A stretch of 64,000 nt of DNA from Botryllus schlosseri. Lineage: Eukaryota. Shown piece by piece: positions 11,740-46,600 of this stretch (positions within the stretch are counted from its first letter, which is position 1; the number at the start of each line of letters is the position of its first letter). A program made the position numbers and the translations under genes. The DNA lies in NCBI GenBank assembly GCA_051294905.1, contig CM119382.1, forward strand, positions 11,098,001 to 11,162,000, given 5' to 3'. The notes under the pieces are model-generated. The model had not been told where the DNA came from. It worked only from the letters and a program-made list of their open reading frames with translations, and ran no database searches.

Positions 11740-11850
11740 AGGAGCCAAGATAGATCTCCGACACATAGAAACTTGGCAGAACCGAGACTGGAACCAGCAA
11801 CCATTGGTGTCGTGACGATGTCGCATAGCACAGTTGATATGACTGGATAA
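11740..11850 (-). mobile_element. Possible tRNA-derived SINE fragment (second copy ~16590-16705)
   Basis: The two loci share gacacata...ggcaga...cgagac...attggtgtcgtgac.gtgtcgc.tagcaca. On the minus strand there is an A-box-like TGGCGCAGTGTG (16690-16701) and a degenerate B-box (GGTTCCAGTCTC). Confidence 0.4.
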
Positions 11851-12009: not shown

Positions 12010-12190
12010 CAAGAGTTGAGCTCGAGATTGAACTGTGAGCACTATGACTTGAACTCGAACGTCTGCTTCCCGACTTGGAATAAGAATTGACTAGGTGTTG
12101 AATAGAAAATGACTCGACTTGACCCGAGTCAAATCCTTCAAAGTGAGATTGACTTGTGACTCGGAGTCTGATTACTTGGTTTTAACCCTG
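12010..12190 (-). mobile_element. Truncated GACTCGAGTC-family hAT MITE just upstream of the peptide-gene promoter
   Basis: Ends ...TTGGTTTTAACCCTG (reverse complement of the CAGGGTTGTAACCAAG terminus); subterminal gactcga/cgagtc motifs as in 31913-32500. Confidence 0.6.
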
Positions 12191-12235: not shown

Positions 12236-12378
12236 ATTGGTAACGATGAACGAAAGCGACGCTTATCGCCAGTAAGGCCAATAGCGTAAACATAAAACTA
12301 CAACTGTTACTCCGACTGTAGCTGAAAATCAAGGTTGATTAGTTGCGGATCTCCGGTTTCTCCAATATCGTTGCAAAG
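12236..12378 (+). promoter_or_regulatory. Putative promoter and non-coding first exon of the antimicrobial-peptide gene
   Basis: ATTGG (12236), GATA site CTTATC (~12262), CCAAT (12278-12282) and TATA-like CATAAAA (12291). Donor AAAG|GTGAGT at 12379; acceptor TAG ends at 12483 directly before the ATG. Confidence 0.5.
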
Positions 12379-12483
12379 GTGAGTTGCTATCTCATGCTGC
12401 TTATATCTGATTCAATAAATATATGCCACCGATACTTAACGTAGCATTGAAGATATTGCTGTGATATCGTTATTGTTATCTAG

Positions 12484-15400
12484 ATGAAATTCCTGGTACC
12501 AGTTTTGCTAATGGTCGTATTATTCCTCGCGATTCACGACGTAAACGCATGGGGAAGAAGGAGACGGAGGGGTAAAGTAAGAAAATGGTTTAAAAAAGTG
12601 GCAAAAAAGACCAAGGCCTGGTTTAAGAAAGCGGCCAGAAAGGTCGGGGCCTGGTATAAAAAGCACAAGTGAGTAACTGACGTGGCTTGTGTACAGTACA
12701 TCTATATATATGGTTTCTAGCAGTATATATCAATTTACGCTTGCTGATAAAATTGTTAGATTGCCTAAAACGCTGCATAGCAATTTCGGCTCAATTCCAA
12801 CCTATAGAAGCATTGCTATATGAGAAAAAATGGATTTATTTATTAAAAATAAATATAAATTAATTCGAATTTTATTGGATGTCTCATGAAATTGTTAGGT
12901 TGTCTGAAAAACGATTAAAACAAATTTGGCTCAATTCCAACCAGTAGAAGCGTAGTTATTGGAGTATCTAATTTAGGCTCTGAAAAAGCTATATTCACTG
13001 TGGCAAATTACGAACAGTTTTACGTGGGTCGTCGCCATCAATTTTGAAGGGTCTTAACTATTGGTTCGCTGGTAACATCGAGACGATATTAAACTTCAAA
13101 GGCAATGTATGAGGTGTATTATCAGCCACCAGCATGACGTCACAATATGATAGCAGAGAGTCAGAGAAGTATTATCCGCGACTGCCAGACTGAGAATATT
13201 CATCTATTTCTTACAGATAACACGTCCTGGTGTAGCTTTTCGGTTTATTTCATGTCCAGTGATAGTGATGACTGTAAATCTGTTCCAATAAGTGCCGTGG
13301 AGTTTCGGAAATGAGCCTTGCTAGATGTCATTATCTTTTGAATAACGACTGAAAATATCGGATTTATCAGTGAAGGTTCAAGTTATCGTTATTGGCTCAA
13401 AATCCAATATCGAGCGGGCTATATGGGGCGTGGGCTGATTTTCATCGACAACACGTTTACTTTACTTATCAAGGCCTCGCCAAATTTTATTGAAGGTAGC
13501 ATTTCCAGGGGTGGATTGCGGTTTTAGTTAGAGCTGACCACAATGATTCGAGTGCTCGAATCTGAATCGAGTATTTATCCTAATGATTCGAGTCTATAGT
13601 AGTAAAAGACCATTTCTTCGATTACTGAAATGGTACGCTCCTCGCCACTAAAAAAATATCAACGTGAATTATAGTTTAGATACTAGTACGACTGTGGAAG
13701 CCTTGAAACCTTTATTGGCCGCCGTATCGCAGCATACCAAACAGTATAGTACGAATCTACGAAGGTTACTGGAAATAACATATTTCTTAAGTCTAATCAA
13801 CCCACAACATTGCCACAAAATGAAATGAAATAGAAACGAGCCATGCTTGCTGTATAGACATTTGCTATTCTCATGAGTCATGCTCGTAAGAATGAACCAC
13901 GACTTGTTGTCGTTGTTGTTTTTACTAAAAGAAAAAAAATGAAGCTTATCACCTGTTGGTATTTTGCACCACGGTTAATATTGGTGTGGCAAGAAATGAA
14001 AAGCAATTAATAATGGCGTACGTAATGGATAGAAGACATATTGTTATAAAATAGTCTTTCAGCACCACGAAAAATTATCAAGGCTGAAATACGTGAATTT
14101 CGGAACGGTGGGAAAATAAAACAGTCACGGCTATTCAGGTTGCAGGATAACACGAATTCAATGATGAGTGGGATAATTTTGTCATCATGTGAGTTGAATT
14201 TCATAGCAGAAATCAACATTTGATTCGGCACATTTCGCAACAAGGAAACTACGATGGAACTCATATTTCGGGCAACGGATCAAAAAATGTTCAGTTCTTT
14301 TCGGATAAAGACAAAGACAGCAAAGTTGAGATTCTACTGAACCAATTCAAAACGAGTGGTCATGCAGAAAGTAGCCGGACTGCAGACGAACAACAATACT
14401 TTCTTCTAAGCGTTTCTACGCGCAGGCGGTTTATTCACAACGGATGAATTTGAACTTTTATAATGAAGTCCCATGTCTGATGTTCGAAATTCACGGTCCC
14501 ATAGATCACGACAGTGTTGTTGAATGATCTTCCGTACTTCGTGATATGATAGCCTCGGTTAATCCTGGACAAGAATGGACGGGAACTTGATTCAAAGTCT
14601 TCGCGAAATCCGTGATTCTAATTCTAATCTAATTTGCAAAAAAAACTGTTGGTATAATTCTAATTTTAATCTATTTTGGAAATAACTGTGTTAGCTATCA
14701 TTCTAATTCTACTTTAATTTGTAAAAAAAGCATTCTAGCTGTATTTCTAATTCTAAACTAATGATGACACGATGAACATTTCCTAGTCCGAGTCTGGATG
14801 CTTATGCTGAATTCAGGAAATGAGCGTATTCGGCATGGCGTAGCTCTCCTATATATTTATACATGAAATTATTAACGACTGCTAATTTGATCACAAGTTT
14901 AATTTTTCATGCAGGAAAGCTATTCATACCGCTGGGAAAGTAGCACTAGCACTAATAACGGGGAAAGACGCTGAAAATCAGCTCGCCAATATCGCTCATC
15001 TCAAAGCTCACGTAAGTCGACTCCAGTGCGCGAGACTTATCAATAAAATTCGATGCTGACTGCAAGTGATAATTATAGCACAAAGCGTCTGCATTTGTTG
15101 AGGTGATTGAATATTTTTTGTTAAAATAAACACGTACAAAGTCAGCGTATGAATTATTTATTGAAAATAATGTTTTAACCCGTTCTCTTCGCGCTAGTCC
15201 ACCTGAGTTCAACTCAACCGTTGTTTGTTTCTTTGTTTAATTCATGAATAACAGTAGTGCTTATCGCCTATGGCAGAGGTGGGCAAACTACGGCCCGCGG
15301 GCCGCATGCGGCCCTCCACACCGTTCTGTGCGGCCCGCGAGAGTTTAAAGAAACTTATTAAAAATAATGATAAAATGCGTACTAAAAATCGAATTAATGC

Positions 15401-18400
15401 AGGGACTTGAATAAACTTTTCTTAGTATATTTCACCATTACAATTCGAAGGCAGTGGTTCTCAGACTGGGGGCGCCTTGGAGGCATGGAAGCATCTGAAG
15501 GAGCGCAAAGCTGAGCTCAACTGAAAAAAAATTTCGCGCTCGGCGCGATTTACATCCCATTCACAACTTTTGCTCTGTATTTAGTCTGAATTATATATTT
15601 AAAAATCTCTCATCCACAGTCGTAACCTTCCATGCCATAAAACTATCAGTTAGGTTTGCTAGCATCCTGCTGGTTGCGTATTGTGATATGTCGATCAGGG
15701 GACGCGAAATCTTTTACCGTCATGAAGGGGCGAGTCTTAAGAAGTTTGAGAACCACTGTTCCAAGGTAAATACTTCCTATAATATTTTTTATATTTAATT
15801 TCTGGCGCGACAGCCGATCTCAAGGCCCACGCAGTTTGAAAGGCTTCAACTGCTAAACATCACAGAAATCTTGAACGAGATTGACATAATTCGGATCACG
15901 AGTGTGATTTCAGATTGGTCATTCCAGTTTTGATTATTTCGGTGATCTGCTTCTAAAAAACGATTCGCGCGTGTCTTAGGTGGATTCGTTCTCTGAATGC
16001 GTGGAATTAAGGTATTTATATTTTATCAACACGTAGTAGACGCGTGTTTGAAGCTAACATGGTTATGATGCTGTCAACATTGTGTGTTCTGGAACTGAAC
16101 CAAAAGTGGAATTAGTAAATATATGAACAGATCGCTGCTCACAGATTTAAATTTCAATCCTGCTCTAAGAAACGGGTCAACCTATTTTTATCTCTATAGT
16201 TTTGATAAATTGGTTATTGAGGTCGACCAGCCTATGAAATCTCGCCACTGTTTCCGACGCGTGTACGATATCATCAAGGCAATGTTTGAATTGTTTTAAA
16301 TAAGCATGAATATTATGTCCATGTCCCTACTAGATCATCAAATACCAATATTGCGTTTTGGTTTATAATCCTAATTTTATATAGTGCGGCCCGCGAATGG
16401 ATTCAGATGTTGAATGCGGCCCGCGAGCTCAAAAGTTTGCCCACCCCTGGCCTATGGGGTCATGTGCTCCAAGACAATGACTTGGCAATGTTCAGGACCT
16501 CTACCTTCGTAATCTTGCGTACGAATTCCACACTCGCGTCCCTCCAACAACAGTCACTCTCGGCTCGGTTCACCATCAATCTGGGCTTTTTTTAACCCAT
16601 TCTATTGCAGTTAGGTTAGCGACACATAAAAACGTGGCAGAGTCGAGACGCGATCCAATACCTATTGGTGTCGTGACCGTGTCGCTTAGCACACTGCGCC
16701 ACTCGCTTCCCTCAACTCAACTGTACTACACTAGGCGTTCGATATAAGCCAGTATCAGTAGATCCGTGATGCTCAAGACACACAAATCAACGCCTACATA
16801 TTTAATGCGTGATGATACGCCCCTCTTGGCCATCATTGGTTGCAGACAATTAGGCTAGATCCGCAGCACAATTGTGACAGCTGTGGTGGTAGTTATGTGC
16901 AGTGGGGCACGCGGGATATGTTGGGTTCGAACCAGAAACCTGTGAACCTTGTGAAATGCCAATCCCATCTACAATATTTATCATCTCGTTTGTAATTAGG
17001 CAATTGGTATCACGCTGTGGCGTTTCGATCGAACTATACGACGCCGCTACCCAAGGTGAAGCCTTGCATTTCTGAACTGGAACGGTAGACATCACTCTGA
17101 TTTGCAATTAATATTCATTATCATGCTTTCATTTTGCTTGAAAACGACATTTGAGTTCCGCGGAGGCATGTAGATTAGCGTAAGTGTTGCGCGGGCTAGT
17201 AAAGGTTAGGAAGAACCGGTCTTAGCCAATGTTCCCTCTAAGCTGCGCACAAACACAATTGCGCAGTGCTCACACGGTCTCTGCACGCAGAAAATCTAAG
17301 TTGTGCACAAAAAATCCGAAGTGATGACCTTTTTTAAGTCGTTACGCACTGTTGTCCAAAGGTCTGCGCGGTGAGTTGGTGAGTGCGCGCAGACTCGTCA
17401 AAAATTAGAGGGAACGTTGGTCTTAGCTAATCTAGAACAGTGGTTCTCAACCTTTTTCACCTCGCGGACCGGTAAAATTTCAAAAAAATGACTGGCGGAC
17501 CGGTGAACTTTCAAAATTGAAATTTAGCCAAAATGTAAAGCATGCAACCGTTTTTTGCAGTTATATGATGCTAGAGAGTGACATTTAGAGGGTTTTGATC
17601 GTGATTAATTATCTTCACGATGGCATCCATGTGATTTTATGGTAGTCAGTCTGCTGAGTCGATGTAAAATTGCCTTATCCAGATAAACGTGCTACCATCG
17701 AGAGTCGTTTACAGTCTTTCGTGCCGAAGGCCGTGGGTTTAACGGACCACGCCAACTCGAATAATATTCATCTCTTTGACAATATCGATACAAGAAGCGT
17801 TTCGGAGTCGAACCAAGCACTTTGTCGTGCTACCTTGCTCATTGCCCACTGGCACTGGACGCATAGGCTACTCTGGCAACTACGAATACAATGCGTGACG
17901 CAAGAAAACACCTTACAGTAACTATACCGGCATCCGTGCCGAAAAAGCACTTCGTAAGCCCACCCCCAAAATCGCTGATCTTGTGCTCCACAGGTCGATA
18001 AAGCCACAGTTGGGAGGATGTTTTCACCTTTCTGAGCACATTCATTCTACTCAGTGTAAGCAAAGAGTTTATAAGTAGCTTAATTGCGTCAATAGCGCAA
18101 ATTTTCCACCATTCATGACTGAATCGGTTTTCTCGCTGCCGTATTTTTGGCACGACTTTCGGAGTAGCATGTTAGCCTAATCTTCATTATTTTGTATTGG
18201 TACGTCATGGCGCGGTAATGGCTGACGCCCAATTGCCTATTTCTATAAATCATGCGTATTTCTCGGAGACGGGCACCTAAGATGCAAGACATTTAGTGTC
18301 ACTAAATCGCGCAAAGAGCGAAAACAAATTGAAAAATGTTGGGAAAAGTTTCAAATAAATACGCTATGATTTATGTTCATCATGGTTGTGTATTGACTCG

Positions 18401-19652
18401 ACTTGTACTCGAGTCATTGCACATGACTCGGACCGAGTGATATGACTCGAGACTGGGTCTACCAAGACAGGCATTTCATTGCAATTTCGAAGAATAGTAA
18501 AGTTATCACGCTGATATTATTTCGTCTGTCCATACTGGCACTTGAAAATGCTACCTGAAACTGTTAAAAGTGACGAAAATGAAGATATTATGAATGAGAA
18601 GCATTCGATATCACCGGGTAGAGTTGTGAAAACTGGGTCTCACATGACATTAACTCGAAACTGGAAAGTCCGCACACAATGACTTGGACTCGGACTGGAG
18701 TCAAAACACTATGACTCAGACTCGACAGTCTACTCAGTGACTTGGACTCGGACTTGACTCGGTGGTGAATTGAAAATGACTCGAATTGACTCGAGTCAAA
18801 ACTAAAAAAGTGAGATTGACTTGTGACCCGGAACCTTATGACTTGGATACAACCCTGATGTTCATTTCCAAAATAATTTCGGGTTCTTTTCAAGCTCGGC
18901 CCTTCTCCTATTAGGCGGTTTGGGGTGCCCCGGTTACGGTCCTGCACAGAATGAATGAATCGAAGACGAATGCTCGCGCAAACTGCGCTGTTTAGCGATG
19001 AATCAGCTCGTACCTGTTCAGTACTTGTCGCTCGCATGTCGTCAAATGGCACGTCTTGAACTTTATGTCAAATCGAACATTTTTTCAGCCCTAGTGTTAC
19101 CTCAAGAAGTTCTGAATCAGTTTAAAATTTAATGTTTTATATATTTGATCAATGGGCAAGCCTTTTACAGTGCATCTTGAATTTAAGGTATAAAATTGTA
19201 ATTTACCTGGCGGACCGGCAGGAATGTCGTCGCGGACCGGCACCGGTCCGCGGACCGGCGGTTGAGAACCACTGATCTAGAACATATTTGACGGAAGTAC
19301 ACCATGATGTACCGAATACTGCCAACGTGAAAATCAGAGATGAAATTCTTTGTTTAATCGCACATAGGATCGAGAGGCGTACGATGACTTTATGCAGCGG
19401 ATTCAGTCAGATGTGGAAGAGAGATTCTCACAGCAAGACGCGGGTCACGTGGTAGCGGTTCTAGATGAATTGACTGACATGCAGCCGGGTAAGTCGATCA
19501 TGCATTGAGTTTCCGTTGCATGAGCTCACTGGTTTAAAATCACAGATGAGCGCTCGCGTTTCTTGCAAAGCATCAGCGAGGATAGCGACGATCATGACCG
19601 TGAAATTCTAGAGGCCTTTTCCGAACCGGACGCCGCTTTTGATGTGGAATAA
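12484..19652 (+). CDS. Secreted styelin-like cationic antimicrobial peptide precursor (169 aa: signal peptide, cationic amphipathic peptide, Gly, acidic propiece)
   Basis: Coding exons 12484-12668, 14915-15011, 19368-19488 and 19546-19652 (510 nt, all GT-AG, phases 2/0/1) translate to MKFLVPVLLMVVLFLAIHDVNA-WGRRRRRGKVRKWFKKVAKKTKAWFKKAARKVGAWYKKHKKAIHTAGKVALALIT-G-KDAENQLANIAHLKAHDREAYDDFMQRIQSDVEERFSQQDAGHVVAVLDELTDMQPDERSRFLQSISEDSDDHDREILEAFSEPDAAFDVE*. The WFKKAARKVGAWYKKHK...IH segment and the DDFMQ acidic tail resemble styelin precursors as I recall them. Confidence 0.85.
14617..14762. repeat. AT-rich minisatellite, ~40-bp unit x ~4, in an intron of the peptide gene
   Basis: attctaattctaatctaatttg-like unit repeated four times. 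Confidence 0.6.
15274..16449. mobile_element. Non-autonomous hAT (Charlie-like) element
   Basis: CAGAGGTGGGCAAACT...AGTTTGCCCACCCCTG; subterminal GGCCCGCG motifs; perfect TSD GCCTATGG. Confidence 0.9.
15452..15758. mobile_element. hAT MITE nested in 15274-16449
   Basis: CAGTGGTTCTCA...TGAGAACCACTG; TSD TTCGAAGG/TTCCAAGG (7/8). Confidence 0.8.
17227..17419. mobile_element. hAT-type MITE (193 bp)
   Basis: TIR CAATGTTCCCTCTAA / TTAGAGGGAACGTTG; perfect TSD GTCTTAGC. Confidence 0.85.
17438..19274. mobile_element. Non-autonomous hAT element
   Basis: CAGTGGTTCTCAACC...GGTTGAGAACCACTG; subterminal GCGGACCGG repeats; perfect TSD ATCTAGAA. Confidence 0.9.
18381..18857 (-). mobile_element. GACTCGAGTC-family hAT MITE nested in 17438-19274
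   Basis: Right end TACAACCCTG, left end CATGGTTGTG; TSD ATGTTCAT on both sides; homologous to 31913-32500. Confidence 0.75.
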
Positions 19653-20008
19653 ACGAGCCTGCTGATTCCTTTTTCATAGCAATCATCTCTTTTTGGAGTA
19701 CTAACCTTTAAATATTCAAGATTGATTCAAGCTGCTCAGTGTATGTGACTATACGCCAACTATCGAAAATGTTCAGCTTTTCCGCATTACATATGAATTA
19801 CTGAATTCCGAATAAGAAGGAAATGCAACAAAAATCAAGTTTAATTGAGTTCATAATCATGGGAATAGAACATTTATACACCATTTCTTGACCCGTTTCG
19901 CACTAATTATATACAGTCAGCCTGCACAGTGAAGTGTAACTATAGACGTAACAGCGGTTTCAAATTATTCGAGAATATATACTCTTTAAATCCTTAATCC
20001 AATCGAAG

Positions 20009-21492: not shown

Positions 21493-23503
21493 CTAGATAT
21501 TCTTGTTAGCACTTCGCGCGATTTATAGTCAATCGATTTCTTGCTTTTAGTGCTGGTACCCCTTCCTGAAAATTAAAAGTACGTCCAATTTATAGAATTG
21601 AGTCTGACTATATTTGCAATTATTAGAGAACGTGTCGCCCAACATCCGACTTTAGGCTATACATGTGCGCTCGCAGAAAGATCGTCGGAAAATGAAACCT
21701 TTGCACAAAATGATTGACGCATCTTCACCGAAATCTTCAATATTTGTACATCCAAAAGCTGATTAATCCTGTCCTTCAGTGACGTGCGGTCAATATGGAG
21801 GCAGGTGAGGCAGTGCCTCACCTGTCGTCGGGGCGAGTACGACAAAATTGTGAAAATCCTCAATAAATATTGAGATATGCATGATTAACTAAACTTGAAC
21901 ATTTTTCACCCAACATCATCAATTCACAAATTTATTATTCAAAGATACGGCGCGAAAAGAGAGGTGAGGCACATGTGAGACACGGGTGGGTCGTGCCTCA
22001 CCTGCGGCAATGCAATTCATGATATACGTCTCATAATTCAAAATAACTGGTGTCAATCAAATGCTATTGTCTGAAAACCCGAATATTATTATTGTCAGAG
22101 CACCAGAACCCCCTTAAAATCGCCAAGGAATGTCAAATTCGGCTATATTGCTCACGACGGAATCGCAGAGGAACAATGGCCAGGTGAGGCACAAACGAAT
22201 CTGCCTCATTCACTCTACTCCCTAACAATCGGACAATCGCAGCACTGTGATACGCGCTATCACCAGGGCCGTAACAGCACTTCGTCAGCCCCCAAAAAAA
22301 CTTTGGTCTTGGGCCCCCCATAGGGTTATAGACCGAACTTCTGGGGGGCTTTGCCCCCCAGACCCCCTCCGGCGATACACTGTTTACCGCTATTCATCAT
22401 ATTCATTGGGAATTTGATTAGTGAATCAGCTTTTGTCGCCTAAGCGCGCGAAGCGCGGAAAATTTCTAGAATTCATGATTTCATCGGTCAGTATGATCGG
22501 GAATTGCATATATTGTTATCAATTTTAATCTTCTCTCTGCTCACGTAATCAGATTTGCCGGTAGAGCTGAGTGAGGTGTGTTTGAAAAGGTAGGACCACT
22601 AAATAATAATTAAACATCTTCGGGCGTATACCCGTTGGCAGGAACGAAACAGCACCTCGTCAGGCCCCCCAAAACCTGGGTCTTTGGCTCCCATAGCGTG
22701 ATAAAACGACCCCCGATCACGTTGTTCGCGTTTGTCACGAAATTATTTGCACCGTATTGTGAGCCAGCGCGAAGCGCGAAAATTTTCGATAATTTATGAT
22801 AAAATCGGTCAATCAGATCGGCGATTGCATATATATTATGCTATCAATTCATTGTCCTCTCTACTCTCGTAATTAGATTACCGGTAGAGCTGAGTGAAGT
22901 GTCTTGAAAACGGGAGGGCCCGTGAATAATGATTAAACATCTTCGGACGGGCGGACCCGTTGATATGACTTCGTTACATGATGTTATTTCGTGACTTCCA
23001 GTCTGCTATATCAAAAAAATATAGAATCGCCCAAACGTAGGCTTCTAAACTAAGAGACGCACACGATTTCAAATTGGTATTTCTTCACTGGCATAAAATT
23101 TTTCCCAGCAGGATGGTATTTGTCTTGTGAGGTTCAGATTGCAAAGACAGGAACATTCGGCGCCAGTTATTTAGGCGCCTATGGACAATTAAACCTATAT
23201 GTATTTTGCAGTGGCGGCTCGTGATAATATCGGATGGTGGGGCAGGGGTGTACGCGATTTTAATTGTCTAAATGACCTCACAATAGTGTATTCCGACGTG
23301 AAAATGTGACTTCGTGGAGGTCACACACAGTTTGTATGGGGTATATACATTAAGCATGGTAAACAAGACTTACGTATTTCAAATTATTCGAAAGAAAATA
23401 TCAAGTACAGTTGTTCATACCTGCATATTTTAACGTTTGTATCAGCAGGCCTATTGCGCGCGGCGTGATTTCATAGTTAAATAGTATATTCATATTGAAA
23501 TGA

Positions 23504-23537
23504 GCCCGAATATTTTCGGCTGACACTCGTCAGGGGT
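23504..23537 (-). ncRNA. Minimal type I hammerhead ribozyme motif (family A)
   Basis: Minus strand ACCC CTGACGA G TGTCAGC C GAAA ATAT TC GGGC. Confidence 0.65.
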
Positions 23538-23554
23538 AATCGTCAGCAACTAGT

Positions 23555-23588
23555 ACCCCTGACGAGTGTCAGCCGAAAATATTCGGGT
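23555..23588 (+). ncRNA. Minimal type I hammerhead ribozyme motif (family A)
   Basis: ACCC CTGACGA G TGTCAGC C GAAA ATAT TC GGGT: complete CUGANGA/GAAA/UH core, 4-bp stem I, palindromic stem III. Confidence 0.7.
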
Positions 23589-24805
23589 TCATTTCAATAT
23601 GAATATACTATTTAATTGTATATTGAAGTTCTGTACCTCCAAGAAGCTCTTCAAAGATTTCATAGTTGCAAAATGTTCAATGAGGAGTTCATTGAAATCT
23701 GGAATACCCAGAATGAGAGCGTTGAGAATCGGGAGCACATCTGACGCATCGAGTCTAATTACTGCAGCAACGTTGATAGAAAGCGATTTTTCAACCATAG
23801 GAATTTTAAAAGTTCACTAGTGGTTACTACTTCGGAAAAAGATGCATTAAAATATAAACAAGTCCACTCGAGCCGAGCAATATCGACTATCGGGTAATAT
23901 CGAGACACCGTTTGCAGTAGACCACATGCTTCAGATCACGATACGATACCCAATTTCGGTCGAACTAGAGACACTGTCCCCTCCCCTGGCACCAGTAGTG
24001 TAAAAGTATATAACATGGCGTCCTTATCCTCGCTTATACGTCTGCCTTTCATTTTTTATCGCAATACGTTGGGAAAAGGTAAGAGTGCGCTTTCCTCCCG
24101 TGTACGATTAGATCAATGAACAATTTCCAGACTGATAAGAGCCGAGTCTTGCCTAAAAACACTGAATTTAGCGTAAAATATATTGAGGAATAGGCTGATC
24201 AATTGATCAGCTGTTAGCCGTCATCGAAAACGAACTAGCTAACGGGCAATTCCATTCACAGACAAACGATGTTCACATCACTACCTCTTCAAATCTCCTG
24301 AAATTTGGTACACGCAGAGATGAGCTTATTCTAAACAGGATGAACTTTATTTTATGAAAATTGGACTTTGGGGTCAAAAGTTACGTCACTTTGAAAATTG
24401 ACAATTTTGTGCTCATTTCGGGTCTGCACATCTCAGGTTTTATTGATGAAATATTCAAGAAGGTGTAGCTAGATGTTGGACGACAGTTGAGATATGGCAC
24501 TTGGATTTATCTGAAGCTTGTCTGATCGTCTATATTTCCAAGTGAAATTTAATACTCTGGAGTTTAGGCTCAAAGGTTAAATTGAGGGGGAAATCTAAAA
24601 TCAGTCAGGCGTTACACGATTTAGACAGCGGATTGCTCAAAAATATATTAAAATATTTTGGAAAAAACGATCTTAAATGGAAGTTTGCTTCAAGGTGAAT
24701 TCGTTCATAGCTGTTTGATTTTGGTTTTGAAGCTGTAAAGTGATGAAATTGCAGTTTTAAGAGCACACTTCATTTGTACATGGAAATGCAGTACTAGTAG
24801 GGCGT

Positions 24806-37600: not shown

Positions 37601-40600
37601 CTTTTTCTTGATCCAAAGTAAGCCAAATGTAAACCTTGCCGCCTTATCGGTGTGCAGAATACGTTTTATATACTACTGTTTTTAATTTTGAATAGCACCG
37701 TGTACACTGTGCAATCTTTTGAATTGGCCTAAATTCTTCCAACACTGATATACCACTTACTTTGCTGACTTGAAAATTGGATTGCACGGTCCATTTGTGT
37801 TACATTTTTCCAGATGGGAAACACGGACGAAATTGAATCACGCATCAAAACGCTCGAGGATAACTTTAGCGAATTCGAAAAAATGCAAGAACAGTTGGTA
37901 AGCCCGCGATATTACTTTTCGCAAATGAAATTCCAGAACGTGGCGCCGACCAGTCCGGATGTTCGCACAAAGCCCGAGTAATATTCTCGCAAAATCCCGG
38001 CGTGTTTGTATTGTTGTAAGGAACAGGGGGCGGGCAGACAATGGCATTGAAACTTGAAATGGACGTTGACATTTAAGATAAAGCAATCTTGCCCGGACTC
38101 GCTTGTGTATATACGGATAAGGATTACGGTTTACAATAATGTTGATGAATTGGATTTGTGAGAAAAGAGGCATTTGAAAGGCACAGGGCGTAGCTTGTTA
38201 ATTTATGTTAGAGATCAGCAAGGTGCCTACGTTAGCTATCCCAGGTGTTCAATTTGAGATTTCTCTCATCAGTTATGCTGCCACCAACACATTGTCGGCC
38301 TACTGTGGCTCATCACTCCTGAATACGTACATCTACATACTGTTACTCTGCAAATTACTGATAAATTTATCCGGCAATATAGAAGTACAGCACCAACTAG
38401 TAAGTGTATACTTTCTAATGCCTTAAACCACCGCTTACTTTTTGTGTAGAATGTTGTCTATTCGTAGATCTCCTTCCTTCATCCGATTGATACTGTAACT
38501 ACCACTGGGGAGTTGTAATTTATCATTTTAATTTCATTTATCTGATTAACAAATAATCCTATTGATTACTGTGATTTTAAAGAGACCTTCCATTGTTCAT
38601 TGCTGTTGGTACCGACTGCTATTTTCACGTGCTACACTTTAGTGCTCCATCCTGACACTTGGACAAAAGCTTGCGAAAATGTACCTGCATTTTTTTCGAC
38701 AGATTTAATCCCCATGATCATGATTACCCTGTAGAATATCTATTACCTGAAGAGTACTCGAAGGTGCGAAGATGCGATGCTTTTTGAGCTGTGCTAATCT
38801 GGAAAGAACTTGTACGATGTTTATTTGTGTTCTGTTCCGCTCAACAGGATGAATTGGCCAAAAAGCTCGGACAATATCCCGACGCATCAGAATTTGACAC
38901 TTTCATCACATGGCCGGTGCTGGAGGAAGCTTTGAGCCAGCATATGAAAAAGATGGAAGAATTACAGCAATCTCGGGTAACGACAGTTACATTAATGCTA
39001 CTGAATTTCATAAGAACTGGGCGAAATAGCCGGTGTATCACTGCATTCTTCGGTGCTTTGCGCTGCTGTTGGATTGATATCAGGGTTGTAACCAAGTCAT
39101 CAATTCCCGAGTCACTAGTCAATCTCACTTTTATTGTTCTGACTCGGGTCAAGTCCGGTCATTTCAATTCACCACCAAGTCAGTCCGATTACAAGTCAGT
39201 GAGTAGAGGGTCGAGTCCGAGTCATCATGTTCACTGTTCAGTTTTGAGTTCACTCCGGTTCAACCCACTTTTTTCAACTCTGCAGTGATATAGAATGGCT
39301 CTGATTCATAATATCGTAATTTTACTCAGTCCCAACAGTTTCTGGCCCTATTTTCCAAGTATCAGGACTGATTGACAAAATACCAATAATGTGGTGACTT
39401 TACTATTCTTCGAAGTTACAATGAACTGTCTGTCTTGGTCGTCTTAGTCTCGAATCATATGACTCGGTTCGAGTCATGCACAATGACTCAAGTGCAAGTC
39501 GAGTCCATACACAAATTGACTCGAGTCGAGTCAATTTACGCATTTGAAAAAAAGACGAATCGCAAAAAAAATCGCGACTCTGATTGATTTATGAGGGCTA
39601 TAGGAGTTCCCTTTTATGGCAAAAATTGCTGAAAAGTTGTGTCTCTTGAACTCCAATACCCTCATATATGATTGGAGCACTAGTTTCTTACTTTGATTAC
39701 TACCGCTAATTTAAAAATCTAGTTGAAATATGTCATATCTTGACATTGGCAGAAAATATTGGCATCAGCTCATAATCATGGTGTAGGTCGGGCTCCAGTT
39801 TCAAGCACCCGTTAGTTTACTGATTTTATTACTCCGCGGGAGTTTTATTATAAATAAACTCAATTACTACCGCTAATGAAAAGTTCTAGCTTACATATGT
39901 CATATGTTGACATTGGCAGAAAATAAAGGCTCATAATTATGATGTTGTTAGGGCTCCAGTTTCAAGACTGCCATCTTGCGTGCAGATGCTTAATCGCATT
40001 ACGTTATCTCTCTAGTTGCCACAAGACCCGACGAATGAAGCGTTGTCATTGAAGAAGACGTCAAGCCCGAGCAGTTCAAGGCTGAGCTCAGCGAAAGAAA
40101 AGTTTCCGCAAGCCACCGATATGCTCGAACGCATTGGGTCGCTGGCTGATAAACACACAATAATGGAAGGGAGATTGGACGTTGTGGAGGTAAGGGGACA
40201 TTACAACTTACAATTATACGATGGGGATTATGGTCAAGGGTGGTCAGTAAGGAAGTACTTCTACATTTTCAGAGTACTTAAGTTGATTTTGCCTACTTTC
40301 ATGACTTTATGCTACTTCCTCTGAACTACTTTGCCACCTCTCGCGGTGAATCGAAAGGTGCCGTCGTAGCAAATCAAAGAGAGAACCATACTAGAAATAG
40401 GTTATAGCATGCGTTTTAAATCACTCAGACTTTACATTTTGCGCAATACTTGATCAGAGTTGCAGTAAAAAGTGTCATGGAAAAATAGTAAAAGTTGCAA
40501 GATAAAATTCCCGCAAACAGCTTAAAACATCATACCACATAAATTCCGAGTATTTAGGAAGCTCCCGGAAGCTGTAAAAAAAGTTACAAAATATATATAT

Positions 40601-43600: not shown

Positions 43601-46600
43601 ATAGCGAGTTTCCAGTTAGTCAAAGGCACTGCAGCCGTTGAGTCGTAATGTAGGCTGGGCAAAGCCGTCGAATGCTCTTAATAGATTTATTTAATTCAAC
43701 ATATATGTAGGATGTATCCAGACAGAGTAATATTATCCAATCTCAACTTGCTCACATTGTTAGATTAAGTTAATTTTATGAAGTGGGCTTCTGGTGGTAC
43801 AAAACTTCACTATTATAACAAACAATATATTCATATTGCTAAATTTATCCATTCTAAGCTTTTCGACTGACTCATCAGGAACGGACGTCAAAAAATGTGG
43901 TTAACCAAATTCGAAATATAGAAAATAATTTTGTTGTGATGTAACAATGATTAGAGACAGAATCGATAATGGCATATAATAACACACAGTTATACCAGAG
44001 ACAAATTTGTCTATATAAGTAACTGAATAACAGCAACAGATATGAAATATTCCCAGAGTATATCAAGATACTTTTGAGATACAGAACTTCACTATGCAAT
44101 TGAATGGTATGTTCAATCCCAAAGTATATAACATCTCAGTACATAAGAAGTAAGCAGTGTGAGTAAGCAAACACTGCTTGACTACTCCAAAAATTTGAAA
44201 GTAGGTCACTTTGCCTCTGACCACCTTTGTTGAATATTTTGTGGCCTTTTTCCGCCGCGTAGTCAGAGTAGTAACTCAGAGAATTTCAGGCAGTTGAGCG
44301 AAGTGAACATTTCCCTACAAACGCGAGTGGACGAGAACAAAAGCTCGGTTTCCGGGTTGTCCAATCAGCTGACGGATTTCGAGAAAAAGCTCCAGGAGCT
44401 GTCGGAGATGAATAAGAACGTGAACAACACCATCACGCTGCTGAAACACAAAACAGAGAGGGCGATAACACCGGAGGAGCCAAAGATTGTCGAGTCGTTG
44501 TTGTCGACAAAATCTTCGAGGTTGAAGAAACAGGTGCGACTCGGTGATTTAAGTTTGAGCTCAGTTCAGGTTATTTAGAATTTAAATATATCAAACACCA
44601 CGAGATTGCGATACAATGAATAGATGAGAAGGCGTAGAACTACTTGCTGAATTCAATCAATTGAACTCCCACCCTGGCCTGCAAATCAGTAAGAAAAGAA
44701 AGAACGTGATTAAAGGGGCATGCACCGCGCAGTGCGCACTCATAACGAAAGAGCCTACACAATTATACGAAAATGGGCAGGTGATGAAGGGTCACAATAC
44801 ATCACTGGTTACAGGCAAAGTTGATCCTGCAATCTCAATATGCAGGCTAGTGTTTAGCAAGCCGTCCGTGTCTGATTGTTTGAAAATACAGAGGACTCGA
44901 GTGGGTAATGCGAAAAATTTGTCCGTTTTTGAGGCAAAAAAGTTTTTTTCAGGCCAAACTACTTCGTAAGGACAGACAGTTCCAATCAGAAATGAAGATA
45001 AGTAGTACAATTCTAAATTATGTGGGAAAACACCTAATTTGCATACGTCAGGTCAAGTTTGGTCAAAATTAGGATTTTTAAGGTCAAAAAATGTCAGAAA
45101 TTTGAGTTTTAGGTCAAAATCTTCCGTTTTTTAGGTCATAAAAATCGCCCTAATATTAACTAATTCATTTGCTGTACTAGGAACCATGTATTTCAATACT
45201 CGTTAAATAAGGCTAATTTTAAATCATCAATTGTTTTGGGACAAAGTCTAACTAGTTAATTATATGCATGCAATTATGCAAGTGTTCTCTCGCCATATCT
45301 CAATTATACTCAATTACCGGCATGAATTTTCTGATTACACAGGATGACTACCGCACTGCTATGTAGTGTCTCTATTGTAGGAACCTTCAGCTATTTCTTT
45401 TAATAACGGGGCAATGTAGACAGTCGAAATAGTTTCTTTGTAAAAGTCTTTTCGTTTATAGCGACAGAGCTAGACTGCTATTGTTGTTTATTCAATCCAA
45501 TCTCACATTGCCAATTTTGTGCATAGGCCTAGTCTGATTTTTGACAAAAAAATACCTTTTACATGTAAGTAAAGAGATTTTATCATGTTTTAAATTAAAC
45601 AAGTTTCAAGTTTCCTTGCTACACAATGAAAAATGTTCCCATTTTTTATGCTCACACTACAAAATCCGAAGAGTAACTTTGGAATGCTCAAGATGAATAT
45701 GGACACAAGAAATCTGGTTTTAACAGTCATTATCTGGTGTGAGGAATCACACAAATTCGCTGTTATGAACCCGAAAATTGACTTCTGACACACTCGATAC
45801 ATTCTGTATGACTTGTTTTGTATATCAGGATCGATAATGAAACAATAGGCCCAAAAACGATCTTTCGTCGATATGAATAAACATATTCAGAGAATAATGA
45901 GTACGTTATAAATCCGTGGCCTTCGATATCGCCCAAGATTTTCACAGAAGTGGGTTGATCCTGACTTGAAGTCGATACTGAACATTAAACAACATGACTC
46001 GAACTGATTGATCCCTCACTTTTAACAGGACTCCGACGCAATATCCGGAATACAAACATCGCTGCTTAACCTACAAGCCGAAATGGAAAAACTCGCCCGT
46101 CTCATCGATTCCGCCTTGGAAGAGCATAAAGAAAAACAGAAGCACATCGACGTATGCGCAGCGGTCAAAGTAACACTTATAAGCTCACTGTTATAATCGA
46201 AAATTTTGCAGACGCTATACGGACACACGGAAAAGCTCAGCGAGACGAAGGCCGACAAGGAAAACGTTCGAATGGAAATAGACGTGGTTAGTAGCCTACT
46301 TTTTATTTTATTATCTACTACAAATGTGATGTTGAGATGTTCCTATCCACTTGATGTTATTCCACCATGAGCAAATTTCAGAATGGAACGTTTTTCAAAC
46401 TCCGAGTACCAGCACTCAATACCCGAGTCTTGTATTGACTTAGTGCTTTGAGCCAAGTAGGGACAGTAAACTTTGTTGATATCTTGAATTGATGTAACGT
46501 ATACGCAGCGATTCATTACGTTTGTCATAGTGTCCAAAAGATACAAGCAATGAATGAGAGGGTATTTCTGTCATGTTACAAAAGCCAAATCTTGATTGTT

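What the first reader, a model, noticed from the sequence alone, without database searches (positions are those of the whole stretch)
12484..19652. Styelin-like antimicrobial peptide precursor hidden across four coding exons
Seen: the ORF track shows only a 62-aa fragment, but splicing through 14915-15011, 19368-19488 and 19546-19652 gives a 169-aa protein. It has a 22-aa signal peptide, a 55-aa peptide with 22 Lys/Arg, 4 Trp and no acidic residue, then Gly and a 91-aa acidic tail. Knowledge: Styela styelin precursors share this signal / cationic helix / Gly / acidic-propiece layout; mature styelins are ~31-32 aa. The C-terminal part AWFKKAARKVGAWYKKHKKAIHTAG parallels styelin GWLRKAAKSVGKFYYKHK and GWFGKAFRSVSNFYKKHKTYIHAG (recalled, not searched). 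Inference: a longer, far more cationic, possibly undescribed member of the family, which small-gene annotation could easily miss.
Basis: partly seen in the sequence, partly recalled or inferred. Interest (0 to 1): 0.85.

Follow-up and report, generated by a model that had tools for sequence, protein, structure and literature searches.

The report
Botryllin-like antimicrobial peptide gene paralogue
This is a real, transcribed sea-squirt gene for a 169-residue secreted precursor that is a diverged sister of the published antimicrobial peptide botryllin (styelin family) with one extra helical repeat, so it is a new member of a known family and not a new kind of thing.

Summary
Four coding exons (12484-12668, 14915-15011, 19368-19488, 19546-19652, + strand) have GT-AG borders. 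They join into a 510-nt frame for 169 residues: a signal peptide, a 55-residue stretch with 22 Lys/Arg, 4 Trp and no acidic residue, then Gly and a 91-residue acidic tail.

RNA confirms two junctions directly, and transcript contigs leave the genome exactly at the third.

It is botryllin of Botryllus schlosseri (158 aa, published 2023). It aligns end to end with the spliced product (E 5e-55, about 54% identity) with no gap at any exon junction. The main difference is one extra 11-12-residue repeat unit.

The spliced stretch at residues 45-83 scores 29.8 bits on Pfam Styelin (cut-off 27), higher than botryllin itself. The styelin-family reading is therefore supported.

The genome is most likely B. 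schlosseri, so this is probably an undescribed botryllin paralogue. A 2026 single-cell atlas already speaks of "one Botryllin paralog".

Untested: the borders of the mature peptide, amidation, the cell type and any killing activity.

Verdict: a new member of a known kind, of moderate interest. This scan noted other cationic/acidic precursor genes in the same genome, but none related to this one.

The parts
12325..12379 (+). Putative non-coding 5' exon. The start is approximate and the end is set by the donor gtgagt at 12380.
   Evidence: The botryllin 5' primer (PMC9966394, Table 3) matches 12353-12370 with 2 of 18 mismatches. GT lies at 12380-12381 and ag at 12482-12483, directly before the ATG. 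The 647-nt transcript contig of X29 has 215 nt upstream of 14915, which equals the 185 nt of exon 1 plus 30 nt. Splicing of this exon is inferred, not shown.
12484..12668 (+). Coding exon 1, residues 1-61 plus two bases. It carries the signal peptide (12484-12549), the motif WGRRRRRGK (12550-12576) and most of the three 11-residue repeats.
   Evidence: phmmer finds botryllin with this exon alone (E 4.4e-9). AlphaFold2 single-sequence mode predicts one long helix, residues 4-61, with pLDDT 80-84 over residues 31-60.
12616..14960 (+). Styelin-homologous unit, residues 45-77 (12616-12668 joined to 14915-14960). Gly78 follows at 14961-14963, then Lys79.
   Evidence: Pfam PF17562 Styelin, 29.8 bits, E 7.6e-7, profile positions 2-30, on the spliced stretch. 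Exon 1 alone gives 15.8 bits over positions 2-18.
14915..15011 (+). Coding exon 2, residues 62-94: the end of the cationic peptide, Gly78 and the start of the acidic tail.
   Evidence: Acceptor ag at 14913-14914 and donor gtaagt at 15012. RNA contigs of X25 and X29 start exactly at 14915 and carry 132 and 215 further letters that do not lie on the adjoining intron.
19368..19488 (+). Coding exon 3, residues 95-135 (acidic tail).
   Evidence: Joint 15011>19368 (skips 4356, GT..AG) is seen in 8 raw RNA reads of X23 and in one contig of X29. 23 of 41 residues are identical to botryllin.
19546..19652 (+). Coding exon 4, residues 135-169 plus the stop codon. The 3' UTR runs on past 19760.
   Evidence: The joint that skips the 57-nt intron (GT..AG) is seen in contigs of X25, X29 and X31 and in one read of X23. 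Contigs run 24-25 nt beyond 19760.

Best explanation
The locus is a transcribed gene with four coding exons, probably preceded by one non-coding exon. It encodes a 169-residue prepropeptide of the styelin/botryllin family of sea-squirt host-defence peptides. It is most likely a second, undescribed paralogue of botryllin in Botryllus schlosseri.

Shown here: the exon structure, two junctions in RNA, end-to-end homology with botryllin, a Styelin-profile match above threshold, and a strongly amphipathic helical cationic part made of three 11-residue repeats where botryllin has two.

Inferred mechanism: the signal peptide (cleavage after Ala22 or Trp23) sends the precursor into the secretory pathway of haemocytes. 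For botryllin these are morula cells. The acidic tail (net -18) neutralises the cationic part (net +22) during storage in granules. Convertase-type cleavage then frees the peptide, possibly at the conserved RRRRR-G or at KKTK-A on the N side, and at Gly78-Lys79 on the C side. Gly78 may serve as an amide donor. The freed peptide of 33 to 55 residues lies as a long amphipathic helix on microbial membranes and disrupts them, as synthetic botryllin does.
For: Gene model.

RNA:
- The 4356-nt and 57-nt introns are removed in raw reads and in contigs from four runs of four studies.
- RNA runs from several studies hold 0.38-0.65 of the exon 3-4 words.

Homology:
- phmmer of exon 1 against 1.84 billion proteins gives botryllin as the only credible hit. 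It is named botryllin, WCR67982.1.
- The spliced product aligns with botryllin over 1-167 against 1-158, E 4.7e-55, with 84 of 155 aligned residues identical and no gaps at the junctions.
- The motif DVNAWGRRRRRGK is identical in both.
- Botryllin's published epitopes span our exon 1/2 and exon 2/3 junctions.

Family: Pfam Styelin 29.8 bits against a cut-off of 27.

Biophysics:
- Hydrophobic moment is 0.55 at 100 degrees for residues 33-66. None of 2000 shuffles reaches it, and there is no peak at other angles.
- AlphaFold2 predicts a helix.

Function of the relative: botryllin is made by morula cells, and the synthetic peptide has MICs of 3.1-50 ug/mL (PMC9966394).

Against: - No activity, processing or cell-type data exist for this gene.
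- Depth on the exons is low (about 1-10) in the four runs laid.
- The exon 1/2 junction is shown only by contigs that break at 14915 and by homology. No read was seen laid on both sides.
- Only the first 30 positions of the 59-position Styelin profile match. Exons 2, 3 and 4 alone give no Styelin hit, so homology of the acidic tail to the styelin propiece is not shown.
- The Pfam score was obtained on a 39-residue stretch typed from the output, not on the whole protein.
- The organism is inferred from an earlier scan note, the literature and primer similarity. It was not tested directly.
Confidence: 0.8

Rival explanations
1. The gene is the botryllin locus itself, seen in a divergent lineage or haplotype of the B. 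schlosseri species complex or in a sister botryllid. It would then be an orthologue or allele and not a second gene.
For: No second copy lies in the 64-kb window. The 5' UTR primer site is conserved at 16 of 18 bases. B. schlosseri is a complex of cryptic clades (PMC12448946). The botryllin authors found only near-identical variants in the transcriptomes and genome then available.
Against: Protein identity is only about 54%, there is a 12-residue indel, and primer sites differ at 10 of 57 bases. In contrast, RNA runs under the same species label from four studies match this gene at 95% or more, with only 5 base differences listed on the exons. The 2026 atlas, built on the 2025 assembly, speaks explicitly of a botryllin 'paralog'.
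Confidence: 0.12
2. Only the 33-residue styelin-like unit (residues 45-77) is the mature peptide. The 22-residue Arg/Lys-rich N-terminal stretch would be a removed pro-piece or a separate second peptide, so the reader's 55-residue super-cationic peptide never exists as such.
For: The Styelin profile starts at residue 45-46. Styelins are 31-32 residues long (PMC8659048). Basic sites RRRRR-G, KVRK-W and KKTK-A lie upstream. By my count of 37 residues and net charge +11 against the sequence, the published botryllin mature peptide starts at GWFKK, after RRRRRGKS. Furin is reported in morula-cell granules (PMC9966394).
Against: Residues 33-44 form a third copy of the same 11-residue amphipathic repeat, and the helical moment is highest over residues 32-52. 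This looks like part of the active helix and not like a spacer. The botryllin borders were themselves set in silico and not by peptide sequencing.
Confidence: 0.35
3. The product is not mainly antimicrobial. It could be a cytotoxic or polyanion-binding granule component of morula cells, acting in allorejection or in extracellular traps. Or the gene could be a weakly expressed duplicate drifting towards loss.
For: Depth is low in the runs laid. Three of the five base differences between RNA and window in the coding sequence change the residue (T77R, H121D, V123A). Botryllin is found on extracellular traps, and its release accompanies morula-cell cytotoxicity (PMC9966394).
Against: The frame, all splice sites and the signal peptide are intact. 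The acidic tail is about 50% conserved with botryllin. The gene is transcribed in runs from many studies. The closest relative kills bacteria and yeast in vitro.
Confidence: 0.12

Closest known systems
Botryllin of Botryllus schlosseri (WCR67982.1 / OP851480; Franchi, Ballarin and Cima 2023, PMC9966394)
   Same: It is collinear from the first to the last residue (E 4.7e-55, about 54% identity). The motif DVNAWGRRRRRGK is identical. Both have the WFKK and W-Y-x-K-H-K motifs and a long acidic tail with shared blocks (HDR..YD, DVEE.F, VVA.LDEL, PDERSR, LEA.SEP). Both are predicted to be helical.
   Different: This protein has 169 residues against 158. It carries three 11-residue repeats where botryllin has two, seen as a 12-residue gap in the alignment. 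Only 15 of 46 residues are identical in the cationic part. The net charge of the cationic part is +22, against +11 for the published 37-residue botryllin. It scores above the Pfam Styelin cut-off, whereas botryllin scores 16.9-19.7 bits. It has Gly-Lys after the hydrophobic C-terminal end. No functional data exist.
Styelins A-E of Styela clava (Pfam PF17562 Styelin; Zhao et al. 1997 and Taylor et al. 2000, as cited in PMC8659048)
   Same: Residues 46-74 match profile positions 2-30 without gaps (29.8 bits). The precursor has the same order: a 22-residue signal, a cationic helix, Gly, then an acidic C-terminal piece. An aromatic residue lies at position 2 of the unit, where styelin D carries 6-bromo-Trp.
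   Different: Styelin precursors carry a 31-32-residue peptide directly after the signal and a 26-residue propiece. Here 22 further cationic residues precede the unit, and the tail has 91 residues. No match to the propiece part of the profile was found. The species and genus differ. The modifications are unknown.
Insect cecropins (styelins were called cecropin-like)
   Same: They are linear, Lys-rich, amphipathic helical peptides with Trp near the start and a Gly amide donor.
   Different: No Pfam cecropin hit at E up to 10. This is a resemblance of type only.

Membership tests
Styelin (Pfam PF17562) | Score on the family profile at or above the curated cut-off of 27 bits | tested here: met
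   29.8 bits, E 7.6e-7, profile positions 2-30 of 59, on the spliced stretch at residues 45-83. Exon 1 alone gives 15.8 bits because the unit is split by intron 1. Caveat: the score was obtained on a 39-residue piece and not on the whole protein.
Styelin (Pfam PF17562) | Precursor order: signal peptide, cationic peptide, Gly, acidic C-terminal propiece | tested here: met
   set against the description in PMC8659048.
Styelin (Pfam PF17562) | Sizes: a 31-32-residue peptide directly after the signal, and a 26-residue propiece | tested here: not met
   22 extra cationic residues precede the 33-residue unit, and the tail has 91 residues. Botryllin departs from these sizes in the same way.
Styelin (Pfam PF17562) | Homology of the acidic propiece (profile positions about 34-59) | tested here: inconclusive
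   Exons 2, 3 and 4 give no Styelin hit when searched alone. HMMER's filters drop weak matches, and the joined tail could not be given by reference.
Styelin (Pfam PF17562) | Heavy post-translational modification (6-bromo-Trp, DOPA, hydroxy-Lys/Arg) and C-terminal amide | not testable with these tools
   This needs mass spectrometry of the natural peptide. Only the Trp, Tyr, Lys, Arg and Gly78-Lys79 substrates are visible.
Botryllin | Full-length collinear homology with the cDNA-derived botryllin prepropeptide | tested here: met
   blastp 1-167 against 1-158, E 4.7e-55. MAFFT gives 84 of 155 residues identical, with one 12-residue gap and two small ones.
Botryllin | Conserved KHK motif that the authors stress as shared with the styelins | tested here: met
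   W-Y-K-K-H-K at residues 57-62, against W-Y-N-K-H-K in botryllin.
Botryllin | Same gene organisation (exon number and intron positions) | not testable with these tools
   The published gene scheme is an image in Supplementary Figure S1 and is not held as text. No botryllin genomic locus could be fetched. Indirect evidence: the alignment has no gaps at our three junctions.
Botryllin | Expression in morula cells and storage in their granules | not tested
   Only one bulk raw-read run and contigs of three RNA runs were laid.
Botryllin | Microbicidal activity of the mature peptide | not testable with these tools
   This needs synthesis and MIC assays. Only an amphipathic-helix signature is shown.

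The most novel reading that the evidence does not exclude
The precursor releases either the whole stretch of 49-55 residues (net about +20) as one very long amphipathic helix, or two separate peptides: a 22-residue Arg/Lys/Trp-rich N-terminal peptide and a 33-residue styelin-type peptide. In that case the styelin/botryllin family would evolve by changing the number of 11-residue (three-turn) helical repeats. That would be a modular way of tuning the length and charge of a chordate host-defence peptide.
Probability: 0.25. Interest if true: 0.55.

Novelty: new member of a known kind. Interest (0 to 1): 0.4.

Why it matters
Botryllin is so far the only gene-encoded antimicrobial peptide described from Botryllus, a model for allorecognition, regeneration and chordate immunity. 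A second family member at about 54% identity shows three things. The family is multigenic. Its signal peptide, its RRRRR motif and its acidic tail are the conserved parts. Its active helix varies by whole 11-residue repeats. This gene also links botryllin to the Styela styelins more firmly than botryllin does, because it passes the Pfam Styelin threshold and botryllin does not. In practice it offers a natural length and charge variant for structure-activity work on salt-tolerant peptides, and a possible marker for a haemocyte subpopulation.

Tried and rejected
- A word-indexed protein search with exon 1 found nothing. With botryllin as query it found only botryllin itself. The 169-residue product is therefore not in that collection.
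- An exact look-up of botryllin in the contig collection found no locus. Synteny and intron positions could not be compared.
- tblastn of the spliced protein against the window found no second copy.
- A full-text search for five peptide strings of this protein or of botryllin hit only the botryllin paper, through the botryllin string.
- A search for four recalled styelin strings hit nothing.
- The other three phmmer hits (P0002-P0004) are repeat proteins with W-rich periodic motifs and were dismissed as compositional.
- Weak Pfam hits (CRA, IFN-gamma, Gag_p24_C) are far below their cut-offs and were ignored.
- Lookups of the scan's own notes by sequence were blank.
- The whole spliced protein was not handed to any remote tool, because it has no reference. 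Only a 39-residue stretch was typed. For the same reason the structure prediction covers exon 1 and botryllin, not the full product.
- The AlphaFold2 model of botryllin has low confidence (mean pLDDT 60.9). It was used only for 'all helical'.
Full report
**Observation**

The ORF list shows only a 62-residue ORF at 12484-12672. The exons are 12484-12668, 14915-15011, 19368-19488 and 19546-19652. Together they give 510 nt in frame, or 169 residues plus a stop.

Each donor is gtgagt or gtaagt. Each acceptor is ag after a pyrimidine-rich tract.

- Residues 1-22 are a hydrophobic leader ending V-N-A.
- Residues 23-77 hold 15 Lys, 7 Arg and 4 Trp with no acidic residue (net +22).
- Residue 78 is Gly.
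- Residues 79-169 hold 15 Asp and 11 Glu (net -18).

**Transcription and splicing**

Runs flagged RNA or probable RNA, from five studies under the same species label, hold 0.38-0.65 of the sampled words of exons 3-4 plus 3' UTR. That is about the share left once words touching the 57-nt intron are lost.

I laid one raw RNA run and the contigs of three RNA runs on 13761-19760.
- The joint 15011>19368 (GT..AG, skips 4356) appears in 8 raw reads of X23 and in a 647-nt contig of X29.
- The joint over the 57-nt intron appears in contigs of X25, X29 and X31 and in one read of X23.
- The X29 contig covers exon 2, exon 3, exon 4 and the 3' UTR. It carries 215 further letters upstream of 14915, which equals the 185 nt of exon 1 plus 30 nt.
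- A 230-nt contig of X25 also breaks exactly at 14915.

The third junction is therefore supported but was not seen on both sides. The gene is longer than the 6000 letters allowed per call.

Depth on the exons is low, about 1-10.

The runs show five differences from the window in the coding sequence. Two are silent and three change a residue: T77R, H121D and V123A.

**Nearest relative**

phmmer of the exon 1 product against 1.84 billion representatives gave one credible hit, P0001 (E 4.4e-9). NCBI nr names it botryllin of Botryllus schlosseri, WCR67982.1, 158 aa.

The other three hits are W-rich repeat proteins.

The spliced 169-residue product aligns with botryllin from the first residue to the last. 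blastp covers 1-167 against 1-158 at E 4.7e-55, and 84 of 155 aligned residues are identical.

There is no gap at any of the three exon junctions. Two of botryllin's published antibody epitopes span our exon 1/2 and exon 2/3 junctions. Botryllin was cloned as cDNA (PMC9966394), so this is independent support for the whole splicing model.

Identity by region:

| Region | Identical residues |
|---|---|
| Signal peptide | 13 of 22 |
| WGRRRRRGK | 9 of 9 |
| Cationic part | 15 of 46, with a 12-residue gap |
| Exon 3 | 23 of 41 |
| Exon 4 | 17 of 34 |

The published botryllin primers match the window with 2, 3 and 5 mismatches. One of them lies at 12353-12370, upstream of a gtgagt donor at 12380. 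An ag lies directly before the ATG. This points to a non-coding 5' exon (inference).

**Styelin membership**

Pfam has a Styelin family, PF17562, with 59 positions and a cut-off of 27 bits.
- Exon 1 alone scores 15.8 bits over positions 2-18, because intron 1 splits the unit.
- Botryllin scores 16.9-19.7 bits, below the cut-off.
- The spliced stretch at residues 45-83 scores 29.8 bits, E 7.6e-7, ungapped over positions 2-30.

The styelin-homologous unit is therefore residues 45-77, followed by Gly78-Lys79. The recalled styelin strings themselves could not be found in any text.

The acidic tail gave no Styelin hit when its exons were searched alone, so its homology to the 26-residue styelin propiece remains open.

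**Anatomy of the cationic part**

Residues 33-65 are three tandem 11-residue units, each with W-F/Y-K-K at positions 3-6. Botryllin has two. Eleven residues make three helical turns.

The hydrophobic moment of residues 33-66 is 0.55 at 100 degrees. No other angle shows a peak, and none of 2000 shuffles reaches it.

AlphaFold2 in single-sequence mode predicts one continuous helix, with pLDDT 80-84 over residues 31-60. Botryllin is predicted to be all helical, at low confidence.

**Mechanism**

Everything in this section is inferred by analogy with botryllin and the styelins.

1. The leader directs secretion.
2. The acidic tail offsets the charge of the peptide in storage granules.
3. Cleavage at basic sites frees the peptide. 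Candidates are the conserved RRRRR-G, or KKTK-A.
4. Cleavage at Gly78-Lys79 follows, with Gly as a possible amide donor.
5. The result is an amphipathic helix of 33 to 55 residues that disrupts microbial membranes.

The published botryllin data fit this model. Botryllin is transcribed by morula cells, and both the propeptide and the mature epitope label their granules. Furin is present there. The synthetic 37-mer has MICs of 3.1-50 ug/mL.

By my count, the published 37-residue botryllin is residues 33-69 of P0001. It starts right after RRRRRGKS and has a net charge of +11. If the same rule applies here, the product would have 44-49 residues and not 55.

**Organism and paralogy**

The tools hide the species.
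- The DNA runs of 2025, the single-cell RNA runs of 2026 and the many RNA studies fit the 2025 chromosome-level assembly (PMC12448946) and the 2026 atlas (PMC13635237).
[quoted passage not shown] This implies more than one gene.

Identity to botryllin is about 54%, yet RNA runs under the same species label match this gene at 95% or more, with few differences. A paralogue is the likeliest reading. An orthologue in a cryptic lineage is not excluded.

**Novelty**

The exact protein is absent from the protein collection. Its peptide strings are absent from the searchable literature. The family, the long precursor type and the existence of paralogues are all known.

Verdict: a new member of a known kind, of moderate interest. 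The repeat-number difference and the better Styelin score are its most useful features.

Noticed in passing
window 12040-12190 and 18707-18857: Two copies of a 151-nt dispersed repeat, 79% identical. One lies just upstream of the gene and one in intron 2. The intron copy has very high word depth in RNA contigs (up to about 2170) and many loose ends. It is likely an abundant transcribed mobile element and not part of the gene.
   Followed up: partly
window 11748-11832 and 16609-16693: An 85-nt repeat at 78% identity. The intron copy sits under a sharp pile of raw RNA reads on both strands (about 45x at 16561-16760). Nearly all of those reads run on into unlike sequence. ARAGORN finds no tRNA there. 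It may be a SINE-like or small-RNA-related repeat.
   Followed up: partly
window 14959, 19446, 19453: RNA runs carry residue-changing differences from the window: T77R (the residue before the putative amide-donor Gly), H121D and V123A. There are two silent changes beside them. Replacement polymorphism is therefore high in a small gene.
   Followed up: partly
P0001 (botryllin, WCR67982.1) residues 64-75: The database botryllin reads V-K-K-W-K-K-D-S-D-K-E-L. The paper's Ab2 epitope reads V-K-G-W-G-K-D-S-D-K-E-L. The epitope variant has a Gly-Lys-Asp like the window gene's T-G-K-D. Botryllin isoforms therefore differ at the likely C-terminal processing site.
   Followed up: no
window 38791-39285 (+): A 165-residue ORF with a weak Tuberin-like Pfam match (E 0.0046, 16.6 bits, below the cut-off). 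It may be an exon of a TSC2-type gene.
   Followed up: no
window 23477-23651 and 43785-44100: The scan's notes list hammerhead-ribozyme repeats at these places in this window. I did not look at them.
   Followed up: no
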